Part shown: positions 151-21,029 of the stretch, one piece after another
How the letters are laid out: the number at the start of each line of letters is the position of its first letter
Position numbering within the stretch: position 1 is the first letter of the stretch
Origin: Phallusia mammillata
Lineage: Eukaryota
Assembly (NCBI GenBank): GCA_965637545.1
Contig: OZ281494.1
Coordinates: 5,456,001-5,520,000, forward strand
DNA length: 64,000 nucleotides
Direction: 5' to 3'
The notes under the pieces: generated by a model
Told to the model about the DNA's origin: nothing
What the model saw: the letters and a program-made list of their open reading frames with translations, nothing else
The model's database searches: none
Translations under genes and position numbers: made by a program

Positions 151-2310
151 GTCTCATAACTATAAGGTTTCTAGCTACCCAATCGCATAAGCGCTGCTGA
201 TACGCAGGTATTTTGAACAATAATTTTTTTAATAGTCAAGCACAATGTACGTTTAATTTTGTCAAGCAAATGCCTAACTAAATGTTACGTTGCCGACTTG
301 CCTTTGTATACGCTCAATTTTATTCGTTACGCCTATTGCATGTATGGGATATGTCTAAGCATTATAGCTTACTTTTTGACTTGCTAATTCTTAAATGGCA
401 ACAACTGCACTATGTCATAACTATAATTATTACAAAGAAATGTTATAATTGCATGGTCTACGTCACGCCAAAGCCAGAAGCGTCTGTAACAGAACCTTTA
501 AAGATTGACCCTTAGTAGTATAACAACTACATTGATATTGAAAAGCAATAATAATATTCATTCCAAGCAGGTTGACTCTGTATAAAAAAAAATTTTGATT
601 TGACATGACTATATCTGACACCAAAACGATAATTATGACATATTTAATCAATTAAACATGCTAAGGAAAAAATATGAAAAAGCTATACTGATTAAGCGGT
701 AAAGATGTTATGCAAATGGCACATGATACCGCGCCGCCGTTGCGCAAGAGTTCATCGCACGGACGCAAAAATGACTCACATTGAGTTTTATGTAAAAATA
801 AGCACCGCTCAAGCAGCAGGGTCAAATATCGCCTAAAAAGAGTAAGTGCAACTCAAATGAGCTTGATGACTATACAATTACCTTGCCTCGACGCCAGCGC
901 CTAAGTATAATAATCTGTCAGTGATTAGCCTGTTAGATCGTTAGGCAAGAGTAAACACGAAACAAAGCGACTTACCAACACACAACTGCAGAATGCAAAA
1001 GCACTGCCCAACCCACAATTGAAAGGCAATAGCGATATTTCACCTGTGATATTAAGACGCAAGACATTAAGCCACACATCAAACCGTATAAAAAACTTAG
1101 CTCAATTCTGAAAAGTACGACGGTTCGTTTAACTTCTTACACGAATTTGAAGCAGAAATTCTTGACCACATACCTACATAGTACTTGGAATGTGCGACTT
1201 ATTAATCGATACTTGTATATATACTTGTATATATACTTGTAATAATTTATACCCTTTATATACCCCCTTTATACCCCCATTGTGTCTATATAATCATTAT
1301 TGTGAAAACTCTACGCGCCATCTTAAGTTGAGTTCCCAGGCATTCAAAAAAATCAACTGTTGAAATCCCATAGAATCAATTGTTCAATTTGTTTAAAGAT
1401 AAACAAGTGTGAATGACAACATCTAACATTTTTCAGATTCATTTGATCGCTATATTAAAAAGGCCATGCTGTTTGCATAAACGCCAGCCTTTTATGAATC
1501 TATTGAGCAATTTTTGTGTTATTGGTTCAGCTAAGTAGATAAAATATGATGAATAAAATAAAGAACACCACGCCAGACTCCAAAATGTGGTAAGACTACA
1601 AAAATGAAAAGGTCCCCACAATCAACGGCGAGATAGTTGTGGTTTTAACGAACGACTGGGAGGGTGGAAGGCGGGCCGGCCGAATCCAGGCTCATTTGTC
1701 ATCAAGTGGTTCTTCAACCGAAGCTTTGGCGGATTCGGACACAGAACAATGAATCGTCGTTAAGTTCGTTTTCAATAAAATAAAAATACGATAAGATGCC
1801 TACTTTATGTTTTTGGCCATTAGTTCAGAGAAGATTCAAACATGGATGTTTAGGATGATTTATCTATGACTTATCCCAATTTATGTCTGGATTACCAGAG
1901 ATTCTTCAAGCATGAATCATCATAGAAAATCATACTTGAATGTTACCTTTCGTGTCATAACACAATGATAAGTCTCGGAAGTTCGCACCCTATCCAAGTC
2001 CGAACCAAATAAGTTCGATGATATTACATGTATGTAACGGGGAAAATTTTCCACCTGGTAGTGTTTGGCGTCCTTTTGGTTTAGTATGTTTGACAAGTAG
2101 CTTGTTTATTCAAAAAGTCAGATATACAAAGTGTTTGAATTGTCAAAACATCACAGAAGGCCATTCTCTGCTGAGTTGACGTTAATTTTAGTCCTGTTGC
2201 ATTTAGCGTATCACTACGCATCCAGTTTCCTTCATTCGATGTAGGAGATTTATTTGATTTAGATTTTTTTCAAATTGCCACCTCTATGTAACCGGTGGTG
2301 CTGTTGCTTT

Positions 2311-2367
2311 CCAGTGTAATATAAGACGGAAACAAAACCTAAGTTTGGCGTCAAGCGATTAGCAGCT
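2311..2367 (+). promoter_or_regulatory. Conserved upstream block of GIY-YIG-like gene 1, containing palindromic core CAAAAC-CTAA-GTTTGG
   Basis: 57 nt identical to 5616-5672 upstream of gene 2, while the surrounding non-coding DNA has visibly diverged. Confidence 0.6.
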
Positions 2368-2994
2368 CCAGTTTCAACGTAATTTAACCCATGGGTTGTT
2401 GTCAAGTAGTACTATGAGATAGAGCTTTATTTAGCACCAGTACGCTGTAGTGAAAGCAGTCAGTTCTAGCCAGTTACATTAATTATAAAACAACAGCAGT
2501 GCTTGCTGATTATAGGCTACAAAACGGTTTCAAAATCTCGAATGAATTAAAATGTTTTCACCAGTTAGCCTACAGTTGCCTTTTGTGGAAGACCATGAGC
2601 AAACCAGTCAGCATATATTTGTTGTTTATTTGTGACTACTTAAAGGCAACAAAATGGACAAACACGGTGCATAGACACTAAGTTTTTGCGTTACACAAGT
2701 CAGTATCTAGCATATCAACCCCATTAGGTAGAAATTCGTTACTTTTTGCAAATAACCATTTAAACAAACCATGTACTTGCGACAGCAAAATTAACTTTTC
2801 TAAAAATAGAATCAAGTGTCAAAAATGAGGATTGTCCCGAATTCCAAATTGTAATGGTTTTACCACAAAACAGAAACTAATCTTCTATACTGTCTATAAA
2901 CCACAACATTTTGTTTGCAGATTAGTATGAATTTGTAGATGTGTTAAATTGCCCTGAGCTACAAATAAACTTAGTTGTTTTACGTCATATCAAA

Positions 2995-4076
2995 ATGTCT
3001 GGATTTTCGAAGTCTGTCAACATGAGTTCTAGCCCCGCACACGAGCCACCGCCAGGTAACATTTTAAGTAAAATTGCTACACTTAAGATCCAACGAGTAT
3101 TTTTGGTAAGCACCACACTCGCTAAACCTATCAAATAATTGGGGCGTATTTCTAGCAAAACTATTTTCCAACTTTATTAAACGGGGTTATTCCGTGTTTT
3201 GCAAGGTTTCAATTTATTTTGATTTTTGATCCATTTAAAACTTCAATTTTATCTGCATAGTCTGGCACAAACAAAAGTTATTGATAATTGCAACTTGGTT
3301 CCCACATTCTGCGAAAACTAATATTTTACTATTGTGGAGTATTACACTTCAAAATTAGATAGGACAATGGAGATTGATGCCACATTGCACTGCAGCAATT
3401 GCGAGTACAGTAATTCGAGTGAGAGTTTAAATTCTTTAAGTAACCACCAGATCAAAATGTTGGCAAGATAAAATCAACCGGAAACATTTTTTGCTTCGTT
3501 GAGCCGCAAGTATGTGGGGCTTTATTGTTTGTTGTTTTTTCAAAAACGTATTTGCGGATCCTTTATCTCAGAAACACCCGTCTTACTAGAACTTTGCTAG
3601 AACTTGAACTTTGAGAATGTTCACTTTTATTGACAAATAATGTTTGCATTACAGGATCGGGTCCCTGTGGGCGTTGCTGCTCCTTGTGCCCTTTTTTGAA
3701 CCAAACCTACTCGCTTCTAACTCCGAGAAATGGACCCTTTTTACTTAATTGTCATCTTACTTGCCAAAGCAAAGGGATCGGTGTGCTGACTTGTAGGTTC
3801 TGTGGAGAGCAACATGTGTTCAGAACCGATAGGCAAACATTTCAGGAAAGAGTTAATCAAATGGCATCGGAATTTAAAAATAAAATAGCAAGAACCTTTG
3901 TGCAGCATTTTGACAAAGGGATATGTAATGTGCAGAAATCCTTACCTACTGATCAAAGCTTATTGGGTTTCTACATCCTGTCGTTAGTCGACAACGTCGG
4001 GGACAAGTTATCTAAAAATAACTGGAAAATTGGTATTGGCGCTACAATTAAACGACCGCCCAAACCATCCATATAA
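2995..4076 (+). CDS. PLE-endonuclease-derived, predicted nuclease-dead GIY-YIG-like Zn-binding protein, copy 1 (~160 aa)
   Basis: Exons 2995-3055 (MSGFSKSVNMSSSPAHEPPPG, phase-1 donor GTAAC) and 3655-4076 (acceptor TTACAG). Motifs CGRCCSLC, HLTCQSKGIGVLTCRFCGEQHV, FVQHF and WKIGIGAT match the layout of PLE GIY-YIG domains. Confidence 0.8.
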
Positions 4077-5158
4077 TTGGCTTTTCTTGAAAATTATTTT
4101 GTGTGGTTTAAGTGTGACTGTGCATGTGTTTAGATACTGTGTTATTAATAAACATCTTTTTAAATAAAGAGGCCATATGTGCAAATGTACAAACTAGAGT
4201 TTCATGTCCGAAAAAATAAACCAATTTTCGAAAAATATTTTTTTTTGGAGTAGATGAATAAAAATAGAGTATTATACAAGTGACGAAACAGAGCATTATA
4301 CAAGCCATTAAACAACTGACACAAACAGCACTCCAGAAAACTCAATCTTAAATAGTTTCTTTTGTTTTGAGAAATCGTCACACGAACAAATATAAATCGA
4401 CATAACACGTAATAAGTTAAAAAATAAGCAAAGACTGACCTAAATTTGGTATTTGGTGCGTACGGTTTGGGATTAAAACTACCAAATGACTACATGCGGA
4501 TGACGTGTGATAAACAAGTGCACGAAAGTAAAGTTTAACTAAGGCGAATTGTTTAATAGATCATCATTAAAAACTCTGCCTTTGAGCTGACGCGGCCCTT
4601 TTAGCCCAACAAAAAGAGAAAAACAAAACCTGAGTTTCGGTTCAACCGCCATTATTACAAAATAATTAATGACATGGCGTCGGGACGCGTAGGGTTTGGA
4701 ACTTCAAAATTCACTTTTAAAAGGGTAAAGCTGCTTCACAAACAACAAACTCGACAAAACAGTTGAAAACTAAATAGACTCAAAAGTTTTTTTTTGAAAA
4801 GTGACACCATTCATATAGTGTGGTTGAAGTTTATGATATATTTTAGCTAGTTCAAATGTTCGTCTAGTTTATTTTGCCATAGTTTTGTACAAGGTCACGT
4901 ACAGAATATTGGTGAAAAACATTCGTGTTTAAATATGATTGTGCAAAGCAAAAATGCTGACGCTTCGTTGAAAGCGTTTAGTTTCCATTGCAATGTTGTT
5001 AGTAACAATAGTACCAACAACGCATGGCAAACACATAAAGAGATGTTGTTAGTGTAACATTAGCAATAAAATCACATGGAGTCAACACGTACTTAAGTGA
5101 AAACTGTGAAATGTTATCTGCAACTAGTCAAGTTTGCAAACTTGTGTCTCATATGATG

Positions 5159-5220
5159 AGGGACTATCCGTAGCTATGATTAGTAATATATATTACTAAT
5201 CATAGCTACGGATAGTCCCT
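5159..5220. repeat. Perfect 62-bp palindrome with no spacer
   Basis: AGGGACTATCCGTAGCTATGATTAGTAATAT|ATATTACTAATCATAGCTACGGATAGTCCCT is its own reverse complement. Confidence 0.95.
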
Positions 5221-5615
5221 TATCCCGAGCGAAGCAGACGAAAGCTTTTTTGTAATGGATTCGCCCCACTACGTCCTTTATCACATGGTTTAGAATAATA
5301 ATGGTTGAGTCAGAACCTTAAGTTAACATATTTACTGTCCCCTACGTCAAAGTGGCACTGGATGTTTAACGATGTCCCAACCATTTTAGGCCCCTTTCGC
5401 CCTGCGTTGATTTTAACATATTGCAACGCATCCGGTTCTTTTCAGTCTATGTTGATTGGAACAAATTTCTCGTGAAACCAAAGTTAGAAACAGTTATGTA
5501 ACCCTTAGCCACAGCTTCTTAGTGCATTTTTCCGGTTGACAACAAATAAATTTATTCATTTCCACTAGATCATTTATAATTTCCACCTTCATGTTACCTG
5601 TTGCGCCATTGCGTC

Positions 5616-5672
5616 CCAGTGTAATATAAGACGGAAACAAAACCTAAGTTTGGCGTCAAGCGATTAGCAGCT
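5616..5672 (+). promoter_or_regulatory. Conserved upstream block of GIY-YIG-like gene 2
   Basis: Identical to 2311-2367; a TATA-like run follows at ~5725-5733. Confidence 0.6.
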
Positions 5673-6028
5673 AAAGTTTCAACGGAATTTCACCCATTAC
5701 CTGTTATCAATGGTACTGTCGACTATATATATAAACCGCTATAGCGGTTTAGAGTACGGAACGTTGTAGTGAAAGAGGCCATTTCTAGTCAGTTACATCA
5801 ACTACAAACCACAGCAGTGCTGATTTGGTTACAAAATGGTTCAAAAATCTTGCATGAAAGAACTAAAGGAATGTAGCGTATCAATCGCATTAGGTAGAAA
5901 TCCGTTATTTTTGGATAAATAACCATTTTAACAAACCTACTTGAGATTAGTACAGAGTAGTATGAATTTGTAGATTTGACAAATTGTTACTCTGAACAAA
6001 TAGGTATTTAACAACAAGTTATTGCAAG

Positions 6029-7081
6029 ATGTCAGGACCTTCGAATTCTGTCACCATGCCTTTTATGCCTGCACCCGTGCCACCACCAGGTAACATATTA
6101 AGCTAAATTGTAACATGTGCATCTTTACAAACGCGAGCACCACAGTCGCTTTTATCCCGTCCAGTTGTAACCAGGGTGCAATTTCAATGCCTGAAAATTT
6201 TACTTAAAATTTATACGTTAATACGTATTTTGTAAACTTTCTGTCGTTGTAAATTACCATTCGCTTTACTTTAAACAAATAAGAACACGATCGGCCTCAA
6301 AAGCTCAAATTTATTTAAAGGCTGGAATTTTTTTATTATAGTTTAAAAATTAGGAAATACTTTCCACCGATATGTTCAGTGCGATATAAGCAGAAAAATA
6401 GTATTTGTATATGCCACTGATTTCATGGATATGTACCAACCGCCAACATCAGGGTTCAACAAATGTTTCAGGGTTCAAAACTTTCAGAATTATAAACTAT
6501 AAACAAACAATGTAAAGTCTATGTATATGGGTAATTCTTTCGGTGTGCTGTGGTGTAAGGTTACTTTCATTTGAAATTAACGAAAAAAGGTTTCTATCGT
6601 TTCCGCTTATGCCTTTGTTTTCAGCACGTATACGTTAAGAAGTTATCTTAAACATGTTACTTTTACAGGATCATCAAGCCGATGTGGTGAGCCAAACTGC
6701 TCTGTGTGCTATGCGGTACCGTTTCAAAGATACCTTTGTCCTCCGAGAATGAGCCCGATTCCGCTTCAACAGCACCTTAATTGCACTAACAGTGGGGTTG
6801 CTGTGTTCACTTGTGTGTGGTGTGGCGAGCAACATGTAGCGACAAGCACTGTACAAACGTTTCTAACACGGTTCGGTCAATTAAAATCGGAATTCAGGAA
6901 CAACGTGCTACATAGGAACTTACTGCTACATTTTACCAGCAAAGAGTGCGGAAGCCGTGTACAAGTGCCTGAAAATCCAAACATTATTTATTTCTACTCA
7001 GTGACATTTGTCGACAAAACCAGTGCCAACAAGTTGTACTGGATAAACAAAATTGGGGCCACCATTAGAAGAGGCCAGTAA
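6029..7081 (+). CDS. GIY-YIG-like protein, copy 2 (~157 aa), tandem paralog of copy 1
   Basis: Exons 6029-6089 (MSGPSNSVTMPFMPAPVPPPG, phase-1 donor GTAAC) and 6669-7081 (acceptor TTTTACAG). Motifs RCGEPNCSVC, HLNCTNSGVAVFTCVWCGEQHV, LLHF and YWINKIGAT. Confidence 0.8.
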
Positions 7082-7898
7082 AACAGACTATGAGTTAAAT
7101 TTTAATCTGGTTCGTAACGTATTTATTATCAGTCGCTTACATGACTATGGTTTTGATTGCCTTTTATCAAAACAACGCTATCATCAAACCAGGCAAACTT
7201 AAAATCAAAAATAACACCGTGACAATAATTACAAAGTTACCCCCTCTAACTTTATTGTTTGTGTTTTTTCGAAAATTAGGTGTGGTGTTCTATATGCTGA
7301 ATGAATTACAGACGATTTTAGGTTTATAACTACCCAAAAGAGAATTGGTAAACTACACGACCAAGTTGCCTGCAAAAAATTGTTCTAAAATAAATTCTTT
7401 GGTGTGTAGTTGCGCACGATTATAAGTCTCGACAGGTGCTTTACATTTGTATCTCAAAGTCGAATTTAATAGCATGTTTGTAGTGTTTTTGTGGATAAAA
7501 AATGTTGTAACTCGATTGTACAAATAACGGCCTAGTTAAAATGAAAATTATAAAAATCAACAACTCTAAATCAACAAGGCTTTTTGTCTGTAATGTGTGC
7601 GTTTGTGCGCTTTTTGATGTGTTTGTAAATGTAAAAACGCAAGTTTGCTTTTACCAGTGTTATTAACTTGAATGCATAGTGCGGATCACGCTTGCAAATC
7701 CATAAGCGGAATAGTAACTTGTGTTCTAGTGTTTGAGTTGATAAGTAAACAAACAAAATAAACTTGAGAAGAAATTTCTGGTCCGTTTGTATGAGTATCA
7801 AACTTGGGCACTTGCTTATCACGTCACAATTAGAAACAGATGCCTTTTGGTTTAAAATACGAACATTTTAAACAATTACCTCGGATAAGCCTTTAAAC

Positions 7899-8359
7899 CA
7901 GGGGTCTCAAACTCAAACTTCCTTGAGGGCCAAAAAAAAGTTAGTCGATGGCCCCACTTTTGGAACGTTTGTTCGAGTAATAACAACAAAATAGTATGTG
8001 CTTGAAAACATTTATATGCGACAAATAGTGTAGCAAAGTGAAAGAACCAACTATACTTTACTGTAACTATACGCGAAAACCATGGCATACAATAATGAAA
8101 CAATCAAAAAATATGACTTAACAATGGGAATTGCTGATTCTTGACTGGACGAACCATTTCGATCGTATGCTTCTAAAATCTAAACGTATCATTCATTTTT
8201 AGCTATCACTAATTTCGAATGATTGTTTCTTGTAATCACTGGTCTGACAAGGTATTCCATCTGAGTTAAACACTTATTTTTTTAAAGTTGGTTCGCTGGC
8301 CGTACAAGAACCCCTGGTAGTGCCGCTGCAGCCCCTGGGCCTCGTGTTTGAGACCCTTG
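7899..8359. mobile_element. hAT-superfamily MITE
   Basis: TIRs CAGGGGTCTCAAAC / GTTTGAGACCCTTG and an exact 8-bp TSD CTTTAAAC on both sides. Confidence 0.9.
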
Positions 8360-10423
8360 CTTTAAACAGTAATAAACATAGCGCTTGAATGTGGGTAAGT
8401 GGTTGAAATAAAACGTCACCTACGTGTAAAGTCGACGAAGCGAAAACATATAGGTTTAGAAAGGAATTAAAACAAATCTAGTGTTTACCAATTGGGAATG
8501 AAGACCAATTTATTAAGTGTAGTGTAGCGATTCTACAGACCCGATATTATCGTAACTTGTTCATTGTGCCCAGAAATATCAAACGTTGGAAAAAAGGTGG
8601 CGCTAAGTTCAAACAGCTTCAAAAAAGGTGGCGCTAAGTTTAACAGCTTTAAAGAGTATTGCGCTTGCAAAATGGGAGAAATAAATTACACAAAACGAAA
8701 GTTTACGAAACATGAAGTGTGGTTAATTTCAGTTTCATCAAAAATTGTACCTACCAAATTACAAATATGTATACATCGTGCTTGTTCTTAAGGCCCGTTG
8801 CAAGATGCGGCGAAAGCGATTTGGACGATGTCACCTTTCACAATATTAAAGTTAAGGCTTTATTTATCATGAAGTAATAACAGCAGAGAAATAATGCAAA
8901 TCATAGAACTTTGCTAACTTCAGTGGCATATAACAGGGAAAAATACGTTTTGCTTAAAGTGAATCAATAAATAGTGTATTAATCCGCATAGTTCGGGTTA
9001 AAAACTGAAACGTAAACCTTTGTTCTAACTTCATTTGTACAGATAGCAGTATTTACTTTATTTTTTGTAACAGTTAGAAATTTCCTAAAAGCTTAAACCT
9101 TTACGAGGCTTAATGGTCCAGGTTGGATTTGTGTTCTATCTATTCACAACATACACACACAGTGTTTGGTTCATTGTAGTAACAACCCAACGGTTGCTTA
9201 GTGCTGTGGCGTCCCAACGCTCTGAACAAATGTTTCTTTGTTTTTATTCCGCATTCGATCCGGGAAAGGAATGTGAGTCGGTTGGGGCAAAACGTTAGTT
9301 TTGTTTTCTTTTCGTGTTACGTTACGCGAAATAGGGAAACAACATGATTGACAATGGCCGATCTTAGATCAGGAAACGGCAGTTGGAACAATGTTTGATA
9401 GCGTAATGTTTATTACGAATCCGTTGTCACGCTATCTGTCTCTTTGCGATTATAGCTTTATGTTTGTGCAGCAAAAATATATAGGTCGCTTCGAATATAT
9501 ATTTTATATTGTTTCACTGTTTGCATTTTGCCCAACAGATCTTGCGGTTTGGTAAAAAAAATTCGATATAGTGCAATACGCACATATGTGTTTGATACGG
9601 ACTAAAGATAAAACCACTAATCAGTATCTGCAAAGAGGCAGGTTACTCGTTAAATGGCTGTCCGTGTTAACAGCGTGTTGGGTAAAGAGTGCTTAGACTT
9701 CAAATAAGTGACTCCAACATGTTCCACTTTTTCTCCCAACGAAGTAGACGGTGGCAAAACTTCAGTTTCGCCCTGTCCGCAATACAAGTCTTCGATTCGC
9801 GCCACTGGAGCAAAGCTGACTTTGTTTTCACTTTTAGGAAAACTCGGGTTTTGCCTTCGTATAGTGTTACTTTTTAATGAATTATTAAGGTTGCCTACAT
9901 CAAGGTAAACACTTCAATCGGCAAATAAAACGTCAGTATAAACAATCTTACTCATTTGCCAGAGGAGCACTATTTAGTAACTAAATAGAATTTTAGTTGA
10001 TACCTTATGCCTGCCGAAACGTTTTATGTGTACTTTACGTGGGTGACAGAAATAACGACACAAAGCAATGTTCACTGCGGCGGAGGTTTCAAGATCTTTA
10101 TTGGCACAATCGAATGGGTGAGGAAAAAAGAAAATCTATTTATGTTGACTCATCGCAATCGCTTTATAAACGCACATCAAACGCTTCAAGAGAAGTTAAG
10201 AAATCAAATCGTTGTTAAAACTATAAAATGTTATCTGCTGTTATAGACGGGCTGGTAAACGGCGCATGGTTGTAAAACAAACAAAACTTTACAGTGCGCC
10301 AGTCCAATAACATGTTTGATAACAAGTGTCTTTAATTAATTTTTTTCTTTGGTCTTATACAACTACCAACTGTTGATAATTTGATCCTTTCTACTACCAA
10401 CGAGGCAGACGGAACTAAATCTT

Positions 10424-10546
10424 CAGTTTCGCCCCAACACACAATGTTTGCAATCGATTCGCGCCAGTTTCGCCCCAACACACAATGTTTGCAATCGATT
10501 CGCGCCAGTTTCGCCCCAACACACAATGTTTGCAATCGATTCGCGC
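10424..10546 (+). repeat. 41-bp tandem repeat x3 inside a dispersed ~200-bp element (other copies ~9720-9880 and ~17310-17470)
   Basis: Unit CAGTTTCGCCCCAACACACAATGTTTGCAATCGATTCGCGC starts at 10424, 10465 and 10506. Confidence 0.9.
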
Positions 10547-11094
10547 CAAAGGAGCTGAAAGAATTTCTATTTCACGATGTGATTTAGTTTGAAAGGAAAC
10601 TCAGGGTTTGCTATAGTATCGTGTTACGTTAAGCGAAAACCTGGAACAACGTTGGCAATAGTTGCCGTTTAACAAATAAATTAGGCAATGTTTCAACCGA
10701 TCATGTTTTTGATTATAATTTTTAAAAACCAAAATCCACAAACAATTATGTTTGTAAACTGGTAACAGCAATGCGTTGAAAAAATAACGAATGAAAATTG
10801 CTATGGTGCTAACTGGCGTCGGTTAAAAAAATGCATCAGTATCAAATTACAGGAGCCTTAGTGTTCTAACTAGTTGATATGAGATTTATTTGTTATAATT
10901 TATTGCGTATGTGAAGGTCGAAATTCGTACTACTGTTATATATTTTAATCCAGAAATTCTAACTTAGAATGGTTTACGTCAATGCAAACAACAGTTTTTT
11001 AGGGATCTAGAACAGGGCTAATTTCATATCGTGATAGAAAAACTTCCGTAAGGTGTGGATTATTTTTTGAATGTTACAAAGTAATCAATACGAT

Positions 11095-11182
11095 TTGGCC
11101 AAACAAAAAATGTGACCGCGGGACGGATAAGATGACCTCGAGGGCCAAAACCGGCCCGCGGGCGGTAATTTGGCGACCCCTG
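11095..11182. mobile_element. Single end of a hAT-type MITE
   Basis: Ends in GGCCCGCGGGC..TTTGGCGACCCCTG, the reverse complement of a CAGGGG-type TIR; the partner end was not found. Confidence 0.55.
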
Positions 11183-11847
11183 GTATAGCCTATATACGTG
11201 AATGATGTTTAAACAAAAAACATCCACTACAAATAAACGTCCCATTGGAAAACTCAAGTGGCATTTTTGTGACAAGTCAAGGGGCAAAGGCATGACAACT
11301 TAACGATGACGAAACCGATCGAGAAAACGATTTTGTTCGTGCCTATACTATTTATTAGGACAATAACATAGTAACGCACGATGTTTCGCGATTCCGATTT
11401 GGGCCGCCACCACAGTTTGAGAAGTCCTGATCAAAAAAGTACTCGACTTATTTATGCATGATTCACTCTGACGTCACGTCGCGTAGGAATCTTCGTTTTC
11501 CTCTTTAACAAATAGGCTGATCATTGATGCTCGATTGCTTGAATAACAGCAAACCTCCTTCTCGTTTCCAGTGCTAATAATCTGGTTATTCACAGCTCTC
11601 TAGCGACACTTGCAGTAAAACCTATGTAGCTGTTGTGACGTCATCTCGTGTCAACTTCAGACAAACGATAAATTACCTGCCAAAGTTAACAGATAAGATT
11701 AACGAGAAATTTGAAGTTTAATTCCAAAATAAATTAGCTGCTGTAAGTAAGAGTATTCGTTATACAACGACCGTTTGGTCTCAGATGCAACAATCAAAAT
11801 TAATTTGTTCGACATATAGTTACGTTATATTCCAAAGTTACGTTATA

Positions 11848-13568
11848 CAGACGAATCCGGTTAATCGCATCATCCATTTGCCAAGGGTATTTGATGCGAT
11901 TAACCGGATTATGCGATAATCCGGTTGCTATGTAAACAGTACATGCCCGTTTACAAAAGTGCTCATTTTCACTTCCCCAGCTGAAACAAAGTTGCAGTGA
12001 CGCACAACTATGGCAACGGAGCAGTATTTTCTCTCTTTTGTTGCGAGAATTGAAAAAATTGCTGCTCTCAGCGCAATACATGACATCATGCTTCCTAACT
12101 GTCGTGGCTATGGTGCAATCGCCTAAGTGTGTTAAAGAAACAGTAGAAACGCACACACACACACACTCTTAATTGGCGCACACGCCACAGTTCGCTTGAT
12201 TTGTGCTTTCTCCTGCAGTCAGGTTTATTTGAAACTATGTGTTACATCGCATCGTAGCTAAGCGGCCCAACATTTAAATTTGGAAACTTCCCTATGATGA
12301 CGGTTTATGTCGTAGTCTTGTTTTGGGTAGTTTTTCTTATAAATGTGCCAGGCCTCTCGCCTAATATACATGTAAAATGGCCTGTTGTTTCTTACCTATT
12401 TCGATTTCTAGTTCGAACCAACGCGTTAACCGGCAAAGTGCTAGGTGCATATTTGTGAGCAAGCCCAAACCCGCAAGTGCACGACCGAAACCTAGTCAAA
12501 CTTACAACTTTGGCACATTCCACAGCGCAAGGGCAGTAAGGCGAGCTGTATCAGTTTCTATTATAACCCGTTATCCAATTGACAAAAAGAATATTTGATT
12601 GTAGCAAAACTTTAACGACTCAGATTGTGGCGCTACTTTCTAGCTTACTCAGCAAAACTACAGCTGCAAGACTAGCGTGACTGTCACGTGATCAACGTGT
12701 GATCGTTGCTTCAAAAACTTAAAGCAGCAACAAATATTGCAGGAATAAATGCCTTTCTTAATTGGTGTTTTACCTGATAAGTTGCGCAAGGTCACGAACA
12801 GAAGACAAATATGGCAATCATTGGCACGTTACTAACTACGTGAATCTAAACAACATGGTGTGATTACTTGCGATCTAACATTTTTTACAACCATTACGTG
12901 TTTGGCGGGTCATGAAAAATATAACAGAAAACCTTTTTAAACATTTGTTTTACATTTAACATTGTTTAAATTTCAATACAGTTTAACACTTTTTGGTGCA
13001 GTTCGCACTTTGTAAGAAATTACATTTAGCGTCTTTGCCGGACACCAGTTTCGTAATTTTAATACGTTGAACTCTTTATTTAAACGCTTGAGTTAAACTA
13101 TTGGCGATTAGATAAGCCAATATAAAGGATCAATGTGCACGGCTGTAAGATAACGACTCCTTGTTATCGCACAGCGTTGCACTGAACGCCGATTTAATCT
13201 CCTAATAACTTTTCCAAAATATTTTATGGTCGAGACGTGTCATTCAACGTTAGGTTATTTGCTGTGGAATGCAAAAATGCATCTACGTCTTTTTCGCATA
13301 AATTACAAACGGAGGATTTTTCTATCATATCGTCGTTTTTTTATGTCAAATACTCGGGCTGTTCGACTTTCACATAGAGATCATCAATCCGGATAATCGC
13401 ATATTTCGTGGAAAATCGATGCGAATATCCGGTTTATGCGATCAACCGGTATGCGATTAACCGGACGATTTTCTTAACAAACGATGGGCGACGGTTTGGA
13501 ATTTTTAATTGTGATGCAATTAATCGGATTATGCGATTAACCGGTATGCGATTAACCGGATTCGTCTG
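11848..13568. mobile_element. Non-autonomous Tc1/pogo-like DNA element (~1.7 kb)
   Basis: TIR CAGACGAATCCGGTTAATCGCAT and its inverse, flanked by TA on both sides; subterminal ATGCGATTAACCGG repeats at both ends; no transposase ORF seen. Confidence 0.85.
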
Positions 13569-14630
13569 TATTTAAAAAAATCAAAGTGTCTATGTATTTG
13601 CTTGCATACTGACAGAACTAAAAAAGCATATGACTTTAGTGGTGAGCTCATCGTAATTTCATGCACCCTACACTTGCGGTATTGCCCCTTTTTTGGGCCT
13701 AAAATCTTATTCCATAATGTTATTATCCAGTCATTTTGTTTTAATTAAAATTACTAGAGTAAAGCGTAGCCTGCCATGTTCTTTAACTCCAAAACCAGTG
13801 ATAACCGCCGGGACACAGCATTTTTGTAACGGTTCTGCTTTTTTTGACTGACACAACGTAACCTAACTGAACAACAATTTAAAACAGTTGAAATGCGAAC
13901 ACAACTTACGCGCAAACGAGTTACTCTACAACAGTATGATTCTACACATTAAACAGTTCACTATATAATTTTTGTGTTTCTACAGTTTTGTATGCATTTT
14001 TGTTTTGAATAAACTTTGTTTCATAAGATGATTCCAAATTGTTTTTAAATGTTTTTGCATGTGTCAGGTACCTTAGCCTGTTTGGCCAAGATTTCTGCTC
14101 ATTGTTTAAGGGGTTCGCACCCAGGACACTCCCAGGGCCAATCCCGATCAAGATTTTTTAAGTCTGTTGATGGGTCAGGCGCGCCGGACCATTCGGCCAA
14201 GTTCCTGCCCCCCCCCTTTTTTTTTTTTTCAAGTTCCTGCCCTTTCTTCTCAATTTTACCTGTTGTCAACGTCTTAGGCCCTCTAGCGTCGTCAAGTAGT
14301 AGCGTGTTTATCAACGACCCGGTTTCTTGAACTAACACAGCATTGGATAAACCTTTGCGAAACCAATTCCAGGACACGTCAATGCAGTAAAAGTTTATTT
14401 ACACTCACAAAAATATTTTAAAACTTACTAACAATTGATTTAAATACAAGTATGACTAAAAACACATCGCCTTCGGTACGGTAAAGACCTGCAGTTATCA
14501 GTAATTGCAATCCTTATCAAATGGAAAAATAAGTGCATGAAACCAATAAAATTAAACATGGCCACGTAAAACAGCGCAGCTTGCGTCAGGAGAATACTAG
14601 GGCGCCATGAAACAAGCAGTGTAATTGTAT

Positions 14631-16913
14631 TTAACCCTTAATTGTGGAACGAATCACCGTTTTCCATCTGTGCTTCGCGTTGCAACCCTCTACAAAAGTC
14701 ACGCTGTAGTAATCTCTAAACTGTGGCTCTACGGGACCAAAACGTTGCCATAAACCCCGAGAAAAATGTCGAACAAAGGTTCTGTCTTCTTCTATGTGCT
14801 TAAATGAATACCTTATACCGGCAAAACTTTCACGAAACGATCGCTCATCGCTTTTTATCACATGTTGTTCTCCACAAAATCTACAAGTTAACACTGCAAT
14901 GCCGCTGTTTTGGCAAGTGAGTCTGTCATTAAGCGGTATAGCCAAATTTCCTGCAGTTACGAGGTGAGTTTGTCTCACTGGATTTACCGCTTCACACAAC
15001 TTGCAACGTAGTGCATTGCATCGTTCCGAAAACCCTGCAAAATATGGTACATTTGGTAACAAAAAAGTAACACCTTTTAACACAAACAGCTCATTGAAGA
15101 CGTGATGCCAAATTAGCGGGTAAACAGTCATTCACCACCACCATATGGCAAGGCGTAGGCTAGAAATAAACTAGCGTTCGGTGGGATTCGAAGCTACGAA
15201 ATAAGTCTTTCTGGTACTACCGCTCTACCAACGAAGCTACTCAGGCTTAGCGGCAAACACTCTTAAAGTTGAAACACAAGCACCGTTGCCTGCCTCGTGT
15301 GCTGCACATGTCAGACTCGTAGTTGGGGATCGACGGATACTGGCCAATCTGTCAAGTTTACACTTATTTCATTTTTCGGTGTGTTTAATTTTGCTTACAA
15401 TTTTGCCTTCGAGTTGCTAAACAAACACGCCTTACCTTCAACATCGTCACGCAAGTTTAAGCGTTGCAATGCAACTGCCACGTCATCATCATCCTCTCCT
15501 GCGACAATCAATAAAATGAATATTAAAATAGATCATATTATAAAAAATAATGTAGCAAAATTTGGTTTTAGAACTCTTTTTTATTTTTGTTGGACAAACG
15601 TTTCAAATTAAAACGAAAAAGTTATGTAAATTTCACCGATCATGAGAGTATTTCGACGAAAACACGTAGAAAAGAAAATATTTTGGTTTAGAGTTTTCGT
15701 TTAGAAACGTTGAACTACAGGGTCTAGAAAAAAAAACAGTTGTAATCTATTTTAATGCATCACCTTCTTGTGGAACCAGGCGACATAATTCACGACACTG
15801 ACGTTCAAGATTTTGTTCAGTTTTCCAATCAATCAATGCACGAAACATCGCGTTTCTTCCACCCATCTGTTTAACAATAAAGTTATAGATTACTGGCTTT
15901 TCTATTTCTGTTACCAATTACAGTTTTCTTGATAAGTTTAAACGCTTCAAAAATAAGGCGTGTAATTCAAATACTGGTAAGACTGCAAGTGCAAGTCGTA
16001 AAGGTGCAAGTGCTAGTCGTGCCAGTCATTTTCTGATTTCAGTTGCTCCATCGCGACTGAGCTTGTAGTCTATAAACGAAAACGTTCTAATGTTATCAAA
16101 ACATTACATTTGTCTATTAAACCTCGGTACGTATGCCTTTTCGGTTGGTCGAAACATTTTGACCGAAAATGCCCTTTGCAAGTTTCGATTTACTCTTCAA
16201 AATCTGAAACTATTCTGAATCCCAAAGTCAACGCATAAAGTTTCCTAACTGATCAATTAAAACATATTCAACTTAAGAATTGTTTTTAGTAAAATGGTGT
16301 TATCAACACAACTGACTTGTTTTAAATAACTGTTCTTTCAAACAAGACTTTTTGCAACGGTAATATTCTGCCAACTTTACCAAATCTGAGATATTATTCC
16401 CATCGAGATATCTTTGAACATCCGTAAGTGGAAGTTCACCAAAGCTGTCGTAGACTACATCGTCGACTAATTTATCGCCGTAAGGCGGTAGTCTTGTGGG
16501 TTGCTCGTTTTCTTCGTCTAGAATAAAACAACGGTTGGAAGATACCAACGATAATCGAAGAAATCGTGTCATTTTTAGTTAAAAATGATTTATTACCCGA
16601 AAAGCACAAAAACACTGCAAGTTGAAATCGTTTTTCTTAACGAAATTTTAGTTCGGACTAGCGGGTATAACGGTGTCGTATACTACTCAAATATCATTAA
16701 AGGTCTTCCTTACTAAACAATAACGACTTTATTTTTTTCAGTCCAGTTTGAAAAGCAATGCCATCTGACGCTATTTTAGTCAAAACCTTACACATTGTGA
16801 CAACTACGTCACATACAATTTAAGTTTACTGCTTTAAGTTTAATGTAAATGTGTCAAGGCTGAATCAAATAGGAAAAACAACAACCAAAAACAATAAATC
16901 CTTTACCTGACAT
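14631..16913 (-). CDS. GIY-YIG-like protein, copy 3, with N-terminal helical (possibly death-fold) module (~243 aa)
   Basis: Minus-strand exons 16913-16907, 16517-16381, 16203-16123, 15866-15764 and 15034-14631 with phases 1,0,0,1 give a 732-nt open frame. Last exon has CNALRCKLC, DRLTCQNSGIAVLTCRFCGEQHV and FVRHF. The exon-3 donor (GTTTAA) is the weakest part of the model. Confidence 0.7.
15129..15345 (-). mobile_element. Diverged partial copy of the tRNA-containing element, in the last intron of copy 3
   Basis: Shares CATTCACCACC..ATATGGCAAGGCGTAGGCTAG and CACAAGCACCGTTGCCTGCCTCGT..GGGGATCG with 36690-36890; decayed cloverleaf at 15174-15246. Confidence 0.85.
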
Positions 16914-19730
16914 TTTGAAAGCAACTTTTCGCCATCCGATGAATACAATAAAATGGAACAATGTGGTTCTCCTGGTAAACGATAAACTATAGATTCTACA
17001 TGGTGATATAAACAACAAAGTTAGGCTAGGTTGTTTAACTACCAAAATTTTAGTAGCAATTAATTGAACAAAAACAATGTTTACTGAAATGGGATTTGAA
17101 AGGTCAATGGCAATAGGATGTATCTGTACAATCTACAGTAGCGAAAACAATCTGTTCGGTTTACGGTACCGACAATGCTGTACACCACTAACAGTACAGA
17201 AAAATTGAACTTCTTTAACACCTATACTAAGGTTAAAGCTGCAAATTAGTATCTGCGATAAGGAAGCTTTAACAAGTGCTTCAATTTATATAACAACTAT
17301 AGCCACGAGTTCCACAATTCTCCCAACTAAGAATGCGGAAGTAAAACTTGGAGTTCGCCGTACTCCACACATTTGTAATTGATTTGCGCCACTGGAGTGA
17401 AGTTAATATTTATTTCCCGCTGTGGAAAATCTGAGATCTCAGGTTTTGCCTTCGTATCGAGTTGAACGAAATCTACGGGAGCAAAATAAGTCATCTGAAT
17501 ATATAATTCTAGTGTACAACCTTACGCACTGATCCAAATAGCTTGAAACAAGGCGAGCGTTCTGCTGGGGCTGCTAAGTTTGTCGCAACTTATGTGGAAA
17601 AGTCAATCGTAACACTATATTTTGTTTTGTGTTTAATTATGCCCTGGTAATCTACAAAGGAACAAAAACACAGGTAGCAAAGTCAATACAGCTTACTTCC
17701 ATACTAAAATCGACGCACACTGCAAATGCGCTGATCGAACGTGTTGTGACGTGGTTCATCATGCTACGTGATGTCAGACCGACCCTTGCCTGAAGAAGGA
17801 TGCTGATTTCTTTAATTAATTTTATTTTTGCTACGTTTAAAAATGTTTAAGTAATCCAAAGACCTTTTGACACGCACTGACTGCCAAAGACACTGGATTA
17901 TCCAAAGCTCGTTTAGGCTTCCACAAATTGACACATTGTTATATTTTTTGTCATTGTTTTCCGATTTTGTTTTGTAAATTATTGCAACCGTTCCACTCGT
18001 TTTTTTAATCATACATCTTTTCGCCCTTATGTTGCATTCTCTTGTTTCTGCGTTGCGCCGTATGGGACGGTGCAAGAACCCACAATTTTCATTGGCTAGT
18101 TTTTGACTTATAACAGCAAAGACACATACCAACTAGTAGTCATATTAATCACAACCTAATCAATTATTATTCGACTACCGTTGCACGATCTTAAGGTTGA
18201 CTGACAACTATGTATGCCACTGTTCTGATTTTGTTTTAACCCGACGTAAACCTAAATGAAGCGAAACTTGAGTTTCGTCCCAACCGAGTCACAGCTCCAG
18301 CGAACGTCATTTCCTGCACGTATTGCATTCGCGTCATCATCTTATGTTGAGGCAAACATGAACTCTCACGCGACTTGACGTTAAAGCGAATTGGTAAATG
18401 CTGTTAGAAATACTTGATCCAAAACAACAGTTTGTTACGCACTGACTTTAAAAAAAACCTTGCAAAGCATAAATGTTAGTTTGGCATCGTGTATTTGACA
18501 CTTTGTTAAATTTTTGCCAGTGGACCCCAAAAATATACCACATATTGGAAAAAGAGGGAAACCATCGAAAAAAACCTCGCCGAACTGTTTCAGGCGCCGG
18601 AAGAGGAGCATACATAAAATGTTGATAGCATTTAGGCACTACACTTTGGACTATTGTCTTGGTAATCGAGTAATTTTCATCAGACAAATTTAATAAATGC
18701 CGATAGGTGGCGTAAAGAGCCCTGGTGATTATTTACACATAAAATTCCGGACATGAAATTTGCCGAATGGTCCCGAGCATCTGACCCATATACACGCTTC
18801 ATGAAAACCTGAGCGGGATTCGTACTCGGGAGCATCCTAGGTCCAAACCCCGCGAAAAAATCGGCCCAAAACACTTTTATCGATAATATCAACTGCATAT
18901 AAGTTTAAAGTTAACTAAGTAAGAAGACTAGGGCTTTGTAGTGTGACGAGCCAGAAGGGGTTTCTTTCGGTGGTTTCTTTTTCGAACCCAACCCTCGTTT
19001 CCTAACACGGGTTGTTAGATTCCAGGCCCCCCTCGACCGTTCCCACCATCGTTTCCCCCCAGTCGTGTCATACTTACAGCGCGCCACACTCACTTCTTTG
19101 TGAGCTCCCGCCAGTCCGTCACATAATGCTGCAGCGCGTTCAGCCATTATCCACCAATCGTGCACAACACCTTGTTGCGCTCCATAACGTTTCAACGTTG
19201 CGCAGGTATTCAAACTTGGTAATTTAGTGCAATTGTGTTGGAAATTATTCTTTCATGTAAATTTAATTTAAATGATGCGATCGATTGCAGCTGTAAAACA
19301 AAAGGAATATTTTTTAATCAACGGAACCGAGACACAAACTGACCCAGGGAGATAGAGATTGCACTGATGTACTTATTCGATTATATGCACCTCGTCTAGT
19401 CGCTTTTTGTTGAAATTTCGACTTTTGAATCGTTTAGCACTACAAGAGTATTTTACAAAATGTATGTTTTTACAGAATAAAATATGTATGCTGTATTTTA
19501 TAGATCAAGGGCTTTCGCCGAAAGTGAAAAAAAGAGCCGTATTCTGCAGGTTCTTTTTATTCTGGTGGTATGATCTGTAAATTTCATTGAGCTGATTGCA
19601 ACTGTAATCAAAAGGAATAAATTAAAACTAATTCGGTCAAATAGAGATTGCAATGATATGAAATACTTTATTTAATTCGCACTTTTTTATTTTACAGTGT
19701 CATAACGTTTTTACAATACTGTTCTATTAG

Positions 19731-19964
19731 GCCAAAGTGACAACCGCATTGTCTTGCCGCCATTTGACGAGTTTTGCGAGGGCAATGAATACAATAGCTT
19801 TGGTGATCTTGATTTCACTGATTTGCGAAAATATTTTAAGTGGACACCACTTTGTGTAATCAATCTGTTAGTTTCAGTACACGAATTTGTTTTTGTTTCC
19901 CGGTTTTGTAGGAGTCAGAACGACATATGATTTGACTTACTGACATACCGACATTGTATCAAAG
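19731..19964 (+). pseudogene. Upstream exon(s) of copy 4, homologous to exon 2 of copy 3, with broken frame
   Basis: GQSDNRIVLPPFDEFCEGNEYNSFGDLDFTDLRKYF aligns with LPPYGDKLVDDVVYDSFGELPLTDVQRYL; TGA at 19928-19930 and one extra base relative to the 63.6-kb copy. Confidence 0.65.
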
Positions 19965-20115
19965 GTAGTTTTAAACTTTAACATATTTGGTACTGCATGA
20001 TGTTGAAATGCCAATAATTAAGGTCCCATCAATTTGAAATTTACTAAACTTACAGATTAATTTAGAGGCTATTAGGTTACAATTAGCAGACTAGAACAAC
20101 TTTTCTGTACAACAG

Positions 20116-21029
20116 ATGAATAGTAAAGACGTTATGCGTTCTGCCTTGGATGACTGGATGAAACGGGATCAAGAAAAAAGTAGACGTCAGTACTTAATAC
20201 AATGTGGGGAATCAGCAGAAAGAGGTTAATACCGTCAATTAACAAAGAAAAAAAATCGAATCTATTATTGACTAAATTTGCTGATTTGCACAAATTTATT
20301 ATTCACTAAAACTTAGCGTTGAATACAGATAGCAGGATGCAAACAATTGTAATGTGCCTGTACCGACATTGTTATTTGCGTTTATGATGCCATGCACTGT
20401 TTTCTATTTGGTTTCCATTCATTATTTTATTTCTCAGGACATACATATACCGTTACGACGTAAGCTTTTTTGGTCCCTGTCATATACTAATTCTATTATG
20501 CAATGATCATTTGGCACATAAACTAAGCACAACTGTGGTACTTAATGATTGTGATGTGCATGTAGGATCATCGAGTCGATGCGGTTATGACTGCTCTTTG
20601 TGTAGCGCTGTGGAACAACAGCCGCACGATCACCTTCAAACTTTACAGGAAACAGTTCCACTTTTTCACGACCTGACTTGTGAGGACAGTGGCGTCGCAG
20701 TCCTTACTTGTAGGTTGTGTGGAGAACAACATGTGGTACGGGCCGATGAACAAACATTAAAGGGAAGGTTTGTTGACATACGATCAAAGTTCAAAACAAA
20801 AAATAATGGAAAATTTGTGGAGCATTTTACCAGCGGTGTATGGGAACTGTTTTCCCCTATGCAGCCCAAACTAAGCGATTACTACACTGTAACGTTAGTG
20901 GAACGTTCCACCGTCAAGAAGGACCGGAAAAGGAGATCGACGCTGTGTCGCTATTTCAATGTGGTAGTTCTTGGTTTTGCGCCTAAACTGGCTTATACTT
21001 TTGGGTTTCGGGCCGAGTTCAAACTCTAA
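20116..21029 (+). CDS. GIY-YIG-like protein, copy 4 (~190 aa if initiated at 20116)
   Basis: Exon 20116-20224 (MNSKDVMRSALDDWMKR..., homologous to MGGRNAMFRALIDWK of copy 3, phase 1) and exon 20566-21029 (GSSSRCGYDCSLC, DLTCEDSGVAVLTCRLCGEQHV, FVEHF). Confidence 0.7.

What the first reader, a model, noticed from the sequence alone, without database searches (positions are those of the whole stretch)
2995..21029. Candidate new system: a host gene family built from a catalytically dead Penelope GIY-YIG endonuclease domain
Seen: four genes (2995-4076+, 6029-7081+, 14631-16913-, 20116-21029+) end in a homologous exon, always entered through a phase-1 intron at a Gly. The shared pattern is C-x(2-4)-C-x2-C ... 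(H/R/D)L(T/N)C-x3-G(I/V)xV(L/F)TC-x2-CGEQHV ... HF ... W. The copies are strongly diverged yet keep open frames and all cysteines, and no RT ORF is in the window. Established: PLE endonucleases have this layout (Cys cluster, TC-x3-(G/N)VIY-x-ITC-x2-C-x3-YIG, R, H, HF, E-x2-W, GLN), and GIY-YIG catalysis needs the two Tyr, Arg, Glu and Asn. Here GIY is GIG/GVA/GIA, YIG is HVF/HVA/HVI/HVV, the Glu and terminal Asn are absent, and Arg is kept in 3 of 4. Inference: a domesticated, nuclease-dead Zn-binding nucleic-acid-binding domain, perhaps a decoy or inhibitor of PLEs or a sensor of their intermediates. I do not recognise it as a described family.
Basis: partly seen in the sequence, partly recalled or inferred. 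Interest (0 to 1): 0.92.

Follow-up and report, generated by a model that had tools for sequence, protein, structure and literature searches.

The report
Nuclease-dead Penelope endonuclease gene family
Four neighbouring genes of a sea squirt (two shown spliced in RNA) end in an exon derived from the DNA-cutting domain of Penelope-type jumping genes; it keeps its zinc-binding scaffold but has lost nearly all the residues needed to cut, and I found no paper describing a host re-using this transposon part.

Summary
Four genes (g1-g4, window 2995-21029) each end in a homologous exon of about 135 codons. Each exon is entered through a phase-1 intron inside a Gly codon.

- **Homology:** a profile of the four exons finds Penelope-like-element (PLE) endonucleases. 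The best hit scores E 2e-21, and some hits are RT+GIY-YIG proteins. Profile-profile probability against intact PLE endonucleases is 99.5%.
- **Fold:** an AlphaFold model (pLDDT 91) matches I-TevI best (Z 8.0) and PLE ORFs in the ESM Atlas (TM about 0.8).
- **Scaffold kept:** all seven Cys and the His of HF are invariant.
- **Catalytic residues lost:** Tyr1, Tyr2, the YIG Gly, His31, Glu75 and Asn90 are each present in 59-63 of 64 relatives and in none of the four copies. Glu is replaced by Lys (Lys or Arg in g4). Arg27 is kept in three of four.
- **Not a mobile element:** the four copies form one clade, and the window has no RT remnant or hammerhead.
- **Coding constraint:** the frames stay open despite saturated synonymous divergence (dN/dS 0.24-0.63).
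- **Expression:** RNA contigs show GT-AG splicing of g3 and of a g4-like paralog.

The organism is an ascidian. No orthologue and no paper on such a family was found. Function is inferred, not shown: non-catalytic nucleic-acid binding. The decoy or sensor idea is untested.

The parts
2995..3055 (+). g1 exon 1 (Met-Ser-Gly..., 20 codons plus 1 base), donor CCAG|GTAAC, phase 1
   Evidence: Sequence and the conserved donor shared with g2. No RNA test was made.
3655..4076 (+). g1 last exon: dead PLE-type linker-Zn plus GIY-YIG module (model protein 160 aa)
6029..6089 (+). g2 exon 1, homologous to g1 exon 1, with the same donor
   Evidence: no RNA test was made
6669..7081 (+). g2 last exon: dead module (model protein 157 aa)
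16907..16913 (-). g3 exon 1 (ATGTCAG|GT); start context CAAAATGTC shared with g1
   Evidence: inferred, not covered by an RNA contig
16381..16517 (-). g3 exon 2 (N-terminal helical module, first part)
   Evidence: The donor at 16381 is shown by an exact RNA contig. The acceptor at 16517 is inferred.
15764..15866 (-). g3 exon 3 (N-terminal module, second part)
   Evidence: Both junctions are in an exact RNA contig with GT..AG on the minus strand, and they are absent from DNA run X3.
15436..15498 (-). g3 exon 4 (acidic linker), donor GAAG|GTAAG, phase 1
   Evidence: The acceptor is shown by the RNA contig. The contig's end is compatible with splicing to 15034.
14631..15034 (-). g3 last exon: dead module (model protein 237 aa)
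   Evidence: an exact RNA contig covers 14743-14980
19731..19855 (+). g4 exon homologous to g3 exon 2 (the 5' exon or exons upstream were not found)
   Evidence: The junction 19855|20116 is seen in an RNA contig about 90% identical, so from a paralog.
20116..20224 (+). g4 exon homologous to g3 exon 3
   Evidence: Junctions 19855|20116 and 20224|20566 (GT..AG) are in the paralog's RNA contig and are absent from DNA run X3.
20566..21029 (+). g4 last exon: dead module with a deviant C-terminus (Trp lost, about 30 extra residues)
2273..2782 (+). g1 upstream region, 76-82% identical to 5578-5946 upstream of g2; better kept than the coding last exons

Best explanation
This is a lineage-restricted tandem gene family of an ascidian. 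The C-terminal exon of each gene is an exapted Penelope-like-element endonuclease module: the CX2-5CxxC linker zinc finger plus a GIY-YIG domain with an internal CCHH finger. It derives from the PLE clade whose intact members read GIYVATC-x2-C-xEQYVG. The module was captured once. It lost the catalytic residues (both Tyr, His31, Glu75, Asn90) before the genes duplicated, and it has since been kept as a folded, zinc-stabilised, basic domain. It is joined by one conserved phase-1 intron to different N-terminal parts: a short Pro-rich peptide in g1 and g2, and a roughly 100-residue helical module with or without an acidic linker in g3 and g4.

Shown: homology, fold, loss of the catalytic residues, single origin, splicing, and coding constraint.

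Inferred: the domain no longer cuts and instead works as a non-catalytic binder of nucleic acid. The metal-binding Glu and the Asn are replaced by Lys/Arg, Arg27 is mostly kept, and net charge is +5 to +10. On this view the N-terminal parts determine what is recruited.

My sub-confidences: real host genes carrying a dead PLE endonuclease module, about 0.8; non-catalytic nucleic-acid binding as the mode of action, about 0.45; a specific anti-PLE role, about 0.15.
For: - **Homology:** a profile of the four exons finds 192 proteins at E<=1e-3. These carry Pfam GIY-YIG at the aligned place, and several also carry RVT_1. hhalign against 24 intact PLE endonucleases gives 99.5% probability, E 9e-23. 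That intact profile hits I-TevI at E 2e-7.
- **Fold:** the AF2 model has pLDDT 90.9 and pTM 0.85. The best PDB matches are I-TevI (Z 8.0, rmsd 2.2 A over 78 residues), T4 EndoII, UvrC and Eco29kI. The whole 133 residues match PLE ORF clusters in the Atlas at TM 0.73-0.81.
- **Residues:** the residue table is. The seven Cys and H40 are present in 4/4. Y1, Y2, G, H31, E75 and N90 are present in 0/4, against 59-63 of 64 relatives.
- **Single origin:** the four copies form one clade (support 100/96) inside a clade (99/97) that holds RT-bearing Phallusia PLEs.
- **Not an element:** the window has no RT remnant and no hammerhead.
- **Coding constraint:** open frames have p<=3e-4 each. dN/dS is 0.24-0.63 with dS>1, and third codon positions are the least conserved.
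- **Expression:** spliced RNA contigs exist whose junctions are absent from a DNA run.
- **Gene features:** poly(A) signals and a shared start context are present.
- **Charge:** net charge resembles that of intact endonucleases.
Against: - No binding, zinc or activity data exist.
- dN/dS is only moderately below 1.
- g4 has a deviant C-terminus and may be decaying.
- g1 and g2 gene models have no RNA support.
- The RNA runs are only guessed to be RNA, and they are contigs, not reads.
- No orthologue was found in any other species, so long-term conservation across species is unshown.
- The high-confidence model depends on the alignment with intact endonucleases. With the four copies alone, pLDDT is 57.
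- The g4 gene body, introns included, is several-fold over-represented in a DNA run, so some copies may be moving or recently duplicated.
Confidence: 0.55

Rival explanations
1. The domain is a zinc-scaffolded protein-protein interaction module with no nucleic-acid role. For example, it could dock onto the PLE RT or onto unrelated partners, with the N-terminal helical module building assemblies.
For: Only the structural Cys/His and the hydrophobic core are invariant among the four copies, and surface residues vary widely. g3 and g4 carry an extra helical module.
Against: The domain stays as basic as intact endonucleases. The acidic and polar active-site residues became Lys/Arg rather than random residues. 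No partner is known.
Confidence: 0.15
2. These are transcribed relics: TE-derived exons drifting towards pseudogenes, with no protein function.
For: dN/dS reaches 0.63 for g1 versus g2. g4 has lost the conserved Trp and gained an odd tail. No orthologues were found. In the paralog transcript, 8 of 13 listed differences are non-synonymous.
Against: Four frames of 133-153 codons remain open although synonymous sites are saturated. All eight zinc-ligand candidates are invariant. The intron phase and the splice sites are kept.
Confidence: 0.12
3. The units are mobile or mobilised. They would be non-autonomous PLE derivatives, or intron-containing genes copied in trans by PLE machinery, rather than stable host genes.
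For: PLEs keep introns and can copy intron-containing host genes (PMC3846280; PMC8557442). In DNA run X3, summed contig depth over g4 exons and introns is about 1300-1570 against a baseline of 290, with up to five variant contigs. This genome hosts active-looking PLEs according to unchecked scan notes.
Against: There is no RT, no hammerhead and no long terminal repeat around the genes. The four copies differ at 54-64% of residues and have different 5' exons. They lie in a tandem cluster among ordinary GPCR genes.
Confidence: 0.1
4. The domain is still a nuclease that uses a non-canonical active site, for example His in place of the second Tyr.
For: Tyr2 to His also occurs in relatives whose other catalytic residues are intact (P0135, P0121). 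Arg27 is kept in three copies.
Against: Tyr1 is Ala or Gly. The metal-binding Glu is Lys/Arg, His31 is hydrophobic, and Asn90 is Lys/Arg or absent, in all four copies. From established knowledge of I-TevI and UvrC, these residues are needed for catalysis in every characterised GIY-YIG enzyme.
Confidence: 0.05

Closest known systems
GIY-YIG endonuclease of Penelope-like elements (Neptune/Nematis/Naiad type; NCBI cd10442 as cited in PMC8557442)
   Same: Same module from end to end: the CX2-5CxxC linker finger, a Cys before GIY, two Cys between the GIY and YIG positions, the His of HF, the VTFVE strand and the Trp helix. hhalign probability is 99.5%, and Atlas TM is about 0.8 to PLE ORFs.
   Different: No RT in the same ORF or nearby, and no pLTR or hammerhead. 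The catalytic Tyr, Tyr, His, Glu and Asn are replaced. The module is encoded as the last exon of spliced multi-exon genes.
I-TevI catalytic domain (PDB 1LN0/1MK0), the reference GIY-YIG structure
   Same: Same fold: Z 8.0, rmsd 2.2 A over 78 of 92 residues, and the top three Foldseek rows.
   Different: 13-16% identity. I-TevI has no internal or linker Cys clusters and has all the catalytic residues.
Ranid herpesvirus 1 ORF41 (P0079, YP_656696)
   Same: Its C-terminal roughly 140 residues are the same PLE-type module in a non-transposon protein. Tyr2 is His (QHVG), and Arg27 and Glu75 are replaced. It lies in the same supported clade as the window copies.
   Different: It keeps Tyr1, the YIG Gly and His31. 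It has a different N-terminal 285 residues and is viral. The long branch makes its exact placement unsure.
Bowfin 'nuclear GTPase SLIP-GC' isoforms (P0135, XP_066573481)
   Same: A PLE-type GIY-YIG with both Cys motifs fused to a host domain (Dynamin_N), also with Tyr2 as His.
   Different: All other catalytic residues are intact. The module is N-terminal. Only one species was found, so it may be a gene-model chimera.
Transposon-derived proteins that lost catalysis but kept binding (for example the P-element KP repressor and THAP domains; recalled from memory, not tested here)
   Same: The same logic: a host or element keeps the binding scaffold of a transposition enzyme without its activity.
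   Different: A different fold and a different transposon class. No case derived from a PLE endonuclease turned up in the library searches.

Membership tests
GIY-YIG nuclease superfamily | Sequence or profile homology to GIY-YIG domains | tested here: met
   The window peptides alone give no Pfam hit. Their profile, however, finds proteins with PF01541 at the aligned place. hhalign to intact PLE endonucleases gives 99.5%, and that intact profile hits I-TevI at E 2e-7.
GIY-YIG nuclease superfamily | beta-beta-alpha-alpha-beta-alpha core fold | tested here: met
   The AF2 model has pLDDT 90.9. I-TevI scores Z 8.0, and T4 EndoII, UvrC and Eco29kI follow. Caveat: a model built from the four copies alone reaches only pLDDT 57.
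GIY-YIG nuclease superfamily | Catalytic residues: Tyr of GIY, Tyr of YIG, Arg27, Glu75, Asn90 (I-TevI numbering) | tested here: not met
   Tyr1 is Ala/Gly. Tyr2 is His. Glu75 is Lys (Lys or Arg in g4, depending on the alignment). Asn90 is Lys/Arg or absent. Arg27 is kept in g1, g2 and g4 only.
PLE endonuclease module | CX2-5CxxC zinc-finger-like linker upstream of GIY (PMC8557442) | tested here: met
   C-x3-4-C-x2-C is invariant in all four copies.
PLE endonuclease module | CCHH motif with two Cys between GIY and YIG | tested here: met
   C-x2-C and the His of HF are invariant. The second His is variable even in PLEs (PMC8557442).
PLE endonuclease module | Conserved R, H, E, N beyond the core | tested here: not met
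   H, E and N are replaced in all four copies, and R is kept in three.
Penelope-like element (mobile unit) | Reverse transcriptase in the same ORF or locus | tested here: not met
   tblastn of nine PLE RT/thumb regions against the window gave no hit at E<=1.
Penelope-like element (mobile unit) | pLTRs, usually with hammerhead ribozymes | tested here: not met
   Rfam finds only one tRNA in the window. No long direct or inverted repeats frame the genes.
Penelope-like element (mobile unit) | Many near-identical dispersed copies | tested here: inconclusive
   g1-g3 look single-copy in DNA run X3. The g4 body shows several-fold summed depth and variant contigs. A genome census was not possible.
Death-fold superfamily (N-terminus of g3/g4; scan note s1-395750) | Profile match to Death/CARD/PYD/DED, or a six-helix bundle model | tested here: inconclusive
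   No Pfam family at E<=10.

The most novel reading that the evidence does not exclude
The family is an ascidian innate-defence or genome-guard system. A catalytically dead copy of the retroelement's own endonuclease recognises PLE target sites or integration intermediates. It then either blocks them as a decoy (g1/g2 type) or signals through an adaptor-like N-terminal module (g3/g4 type). The conserved 5' regions combined with fast-diverging binding exons would reflect an arms race.
Probability: 0.12. Interest if true: 0.85.

Novelty: new variant of a known kind. Interest (0 to 1): 0.6.

Why it matters
Penelope-like elements are widespread in animals, yet their endonuclease is poorly understood. 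Arkhipova et al. 2013 (PMC3846280) explicitly found no domesticated Penelope ORFs in a rotifer, and my library searches found no report of a host gene built from this endonuclease.

A gene family that keeps the two zinc motifs and the fold but discards catalysis separates the binding role of this module from its cutting role. That gives a natural tool for asking what the PLE linker and CCHH fingers recognise. It also adds a pseudo-nuclease branch to the GIY-YIG superfamily.

Similar degenerate modules appeared in a frog herpesvirus protein and in an unidentified protein rich in Gln and Asn. Re-use of this module may therefore be recurrent.

Tried and rejected
- **Sequence and feature searches that gave nothing:** Pfam on the four peptides gave only sub-threshold noise. 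A PDB sequence search with their profile gave nothing. The ESM Atlas search by features gave nothing usable.
- **Searches for orthologues that gave nothing:** The search for homologous proteins with the 237-aa g3 model found no hit, not even the gene itself, so this genome's proteins are not in that collection. A metagenome scan with family-specific peptide patterns gave 123 pattern matches, none confirmed.
- **Foldseek on PDB:** I-TevI ranked first, but at a non-significant E of 0.11. The wider structural aligner was needed.
- **g4 first exon:** no convincing candidate was found. An RNA contig at 19255-19603 ends at a GT donor, but its continuation is not in the window.
- **dN/dS:** synonymous sites are saturated, so the ratios are rough. 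The 13 listed differences of the paralog transcript (5 synonymous, 8 non-synonymous) are too few to test.
- **SLIP-GC architecture:** only the bowfin protein itself was found, and no paper links SLIP-GC or Ranid herpesvirus to GIY-YIG.
- **Explanations rejected:**
  - Chance Cys-rich similarity, because of the profile, fold and tree evidence.
  - In-situ decayed PLE insertions, because no RT or thumb remnant lies upstream of any acceptor.
Full report
**What is there.** The window holds exactly four copies of a homologous coding stretch of about 135 codons. They lie at 3655-4076 (+), 6669-7081 (+), 15034-14631 (-) and 20566-21029 (+). They are 36-46% identical as proteins.

Each copy follows a pyrimidine-rich tract and a YAG acceptor that cuts a Gly codon after its first base, which makes a phase-1 intron. 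Each frame is open in at most 6 of 20,000 shuffles of its own bases, while the other five frames carry 3-12 stops. The window has no N runs.

**Gene models.**
- **g1 and g2** have a homologous first exon (2995-3055 and 6029-6089). It starts Met-Ser-Gly and ends in the same CCAG|GTAAC donor in phase 1. The model proteins are 160 and 157 aa. These two models are inferred only, with no RNA test.
- **g3** has five exons: 16913-16907, 16517-16381, 15866-15764, 15498-15436 and 15034-14631, giving 237 aa. An exact 241-nt contig from a run guessed to be RNA joins 16453-16381, 15866-15764 and 15498-15436 through minus-strand GT..AG introns. A second exact contig lies inside the last exon. The junctions are absent from DNA run X3.
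- **g4**: a 992-nt contig about 90% identical to it, so from a paralog elsewhere in the genome, joins 19751-19855, 20116-20224 and 20566 onward through GT..AG introns. The true first exon was not found.
- **Shared gene features.** g1, g2 and g3 share the start context CAA(A/G)ATGTC. All four genes have poly(A) signals 70-310 nt after the stop.

**What the exon is.** The peptides alone match no Pfam family. A profile of the four, scored against 1.84 billion representative proteins, finds 192 proteins at E<=1e-3, with the best at 2e-21. The hits carry Pfam GIY-YIG exactly where they align. Several are proteins of 770-970 aa with RVT_1 followed by a C-terminal GIY-YIG, which is the Penelope-like-element (PLE) layout. 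Two of these are from the ascidian Phallusia mammillata.

The nearest relatives read GIYVATC-x2-C-xEQYVG where the window reads GI(A/G)V(L/F)TC-x2-CGEQHV. Profile-profile comparison with 24 intact PLE endonucleases gives 99.5% probability and E 9e-23 over 117 columns. The intact profile in turn hits I-TevI at E 2e-7.

An AlphaFold model of the g3 exon, built with a 68-row alignment, has pLDDT 90.9 and pTM 0.85. Its best solved match is the I-TevI catalytic domain (Z 8.0, rmsd 2.2 A, 78 residues), followed by T4 EndoII, UvrC, a GIY-YIG restriction enzyme and Eco29kI. Foldseek also ranks I-TevI first, but at E 0.11. In the ESM Atlas the whole 133 residues superpose at TM 0.73-0.81 on clusters annotated GIY-YIG plus RVT_1.

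One caveat applies. With only the four window copies as alignment, the model falls to pLDDT 57, although the order of strands and helices is the same. The confident fold therefore leans on the established homology.

**Dead or alive.** The layout matches the description by Craig et al. (PMC8557442): a CX2-5CxxC linker finger, a CCHH finger with two Cys between GIY and YIG, then R, H, E and N. I compared the four window copies with 64 relatives.

| Position | 64 relatives | Window copies |
|---|---|---|
| Seven Cys and the His of HF | 63-64 | 4/4 |
| Tyr of GIY | 61 | 0/4 (Ala or Gly) |
| Tyr of YIG | 61 | 0/4 (His) |
| Gly of YIG | 63 | 0/4 |
| His31 | 59 | 0/4 (Ile, Met or Leu) |
| Glu75 | 61 | 0/4 (Lys; Lys or Arg in g4, depending on the alignment) |
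| Asn90 | 59 | 0/4 (Lys, Arg or missing) |
| Arg27 | 59 | 3/4 (g1, g2, g4) |

The I-TevI numbering is tied to these columns. Because all four copies share these replacements, parsimony places the loss before the duplications. The domain remains basic (+5 to +10, against +9 +/- 4 for relatives).

**Host genes or elements.** A maximum-likelihood tree puts the four copies in one clade (support 100/96) on a long stem. That clade sits inside a supported group (99/97) that holds the RT-bearing Phallusia PLEs. The order within the window clade is g2, then g1, then g3+g4.

The window contains no RT or thumb remnant, no hammerhead ribozyme, and no long repeats framing the genes. Neighbouring genes are LDLa-GPCR and adhesion-GPCR-like genes. 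Their best named relatives are from Ciona, Clavelina and Styela, so the organism is an ascidian.

Synonymous divergence among the copies is saturated (dS 1.1-2.2), and dN/dS is 0.24-0.63. Third codon positions are the least conserved. This indicates moderate purifying selection.

Two points cut the other way:
- PLEs are known to keep introns and even to copy intron-bearing host genes (PMC3846280; PMC8557442).
- The g4 gene body, introns included, shows several-fold summed contig depth in a DNA run. Recent copying of g4-like units is therefore likely, and its mechanism is open.

The 5' flank and first exon of g1 and g2 are 73-82% identical, far better kept than their last exons. This points to gene conversion or partial duplication at the 5' end, or to fast divergence of the binding exon.

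**How it most likely works.** Shown: a folded PLE-endonuclease scaffold without its catalytic set, in spliced and constrained genes with two architectures. Inferred: it binds nucleic acid without cutting. The zinc motifs are kept, the metal site is turned basic, and Arg27 is mostly retained. The variable N-terminal parts would confer partner or localisation specificity.

A role against PLEs, as decoy or sensor, is attractive but has no evidence here.

**Comparison and novelty.** This is a GIY-YIG-fold, PLE-type module that fails the catalytic and the RT-linkage tests. It should therefore not be filed as an endonuclease or as a PLE. No orthologue appeared in the protein libraries or in metagenome contigs, and no paper on an exapted PLE endonuclease was found.

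Related oddities surfaced during the search:
- Ranid herpesvirus 1 ORF41 carries a partly degenerate copy of the module.
- An unidentified protein rich in Gln and Asn carries 2-3 degenerate copies.
- A bowfin SLIP-GC gene model carries a nearly intact copy.

I rate the finding as a new variant of a known kind: a pseudo-nuclease branch of GIY-YIG, and a transposon-domain exaptation from a class with no published case that I could find.

Noticed in passing
P0079 (Ranid herpesvirus 1 ORF41), residues 285-424: A frog alloherpesvirus protein ends in a PLE-type linker-Zn plus GIY-YIG-like module with Tyr2 as His, Arg27 as Asp and Glu75 as Val. No paper in the library links this virus to GIY-YIG.
   Followed up: partly
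P0135 (bowfin 'nuclear GTPase SLIP-GC' isoform X2), residues 46-187: An N-terminal PLE-type GIY-YIG, with only Tyr2 changed to His, lies ahead of a Dynamin_N GTPase. No second species was found, so it may be a gene-model chimera with a PLE fragment.
   Followed up: partly
L001:79-1896 (P0045; Logan SRR23998775, also SRR32993529): A 605-aa protein rich in Gln and Asn, from an unidentified eukaryote, carries two full PLE-endonuclease-like modules and the start of a third. Nearly all catalytic residues are replaced, so this is another apparently dead set.
   Followed up: partly
window 15136-15332 and 19054-19210: A very high-copy repeat. Summed contig depth in DNA run X3 is 4.5e4-2e5 against a baseline of 290. 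It is also abundant in the RNA-like runs. One copy lies in g3's last intron.
   Followed up: no
window 2273-3076 versus 5578-6110: The upstream region and first exon of g1 and g2 are 73-82% identical, while their last exons align only over 65 nt at 72%. This suggests 5' gene conversion, partial duplication or fast divergence of the coding exon.
   Followed up: partly
window 19255-19603: An exact 380-nt contig from an RNA-like run ends at a GT donor at 19603/19604 and continues with 28 nt that occur nowhere in the window. It is an unassigned plus-strand exon upstream of g4.
   Followed up: partly
window 10424-10548: Three perfect head-to-tail copies of a 43-nt unit overlapping by 2 nt, with related 46-49-nt segments at 9728-9842 and 17315-17429.
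   Followed up: no
window 23634-27249, 28103-28444, 33621-36281, 46128-46493, 54454-54852; also 44216-44788, 50836-52450, 58946-61121: A cluster of intron-poor LDLa-repeat class-A GPCR genes and fragments, plus adhesion-GPCR-like ORFs. The best named relatives are Ciona proteins at 45-47% identity.
   Followed up: partly
P0030 (MEC8567887.1): This entry is filed in NCBI as a GIY-YIG nuclease of a Pseudomonadota MAG. It is in fact an RT-thumb plus endonuclease fragment of a eukaryotic PLE, so probably eukaryotic contamination of a metagenome bin.
   Followed up: no
P0129: A 433-aa protein with leucine-rich repeats followed by an intact PLE-type GIY-YIG. It is either another fusion or a gene-model chimera.
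   Followed up: no
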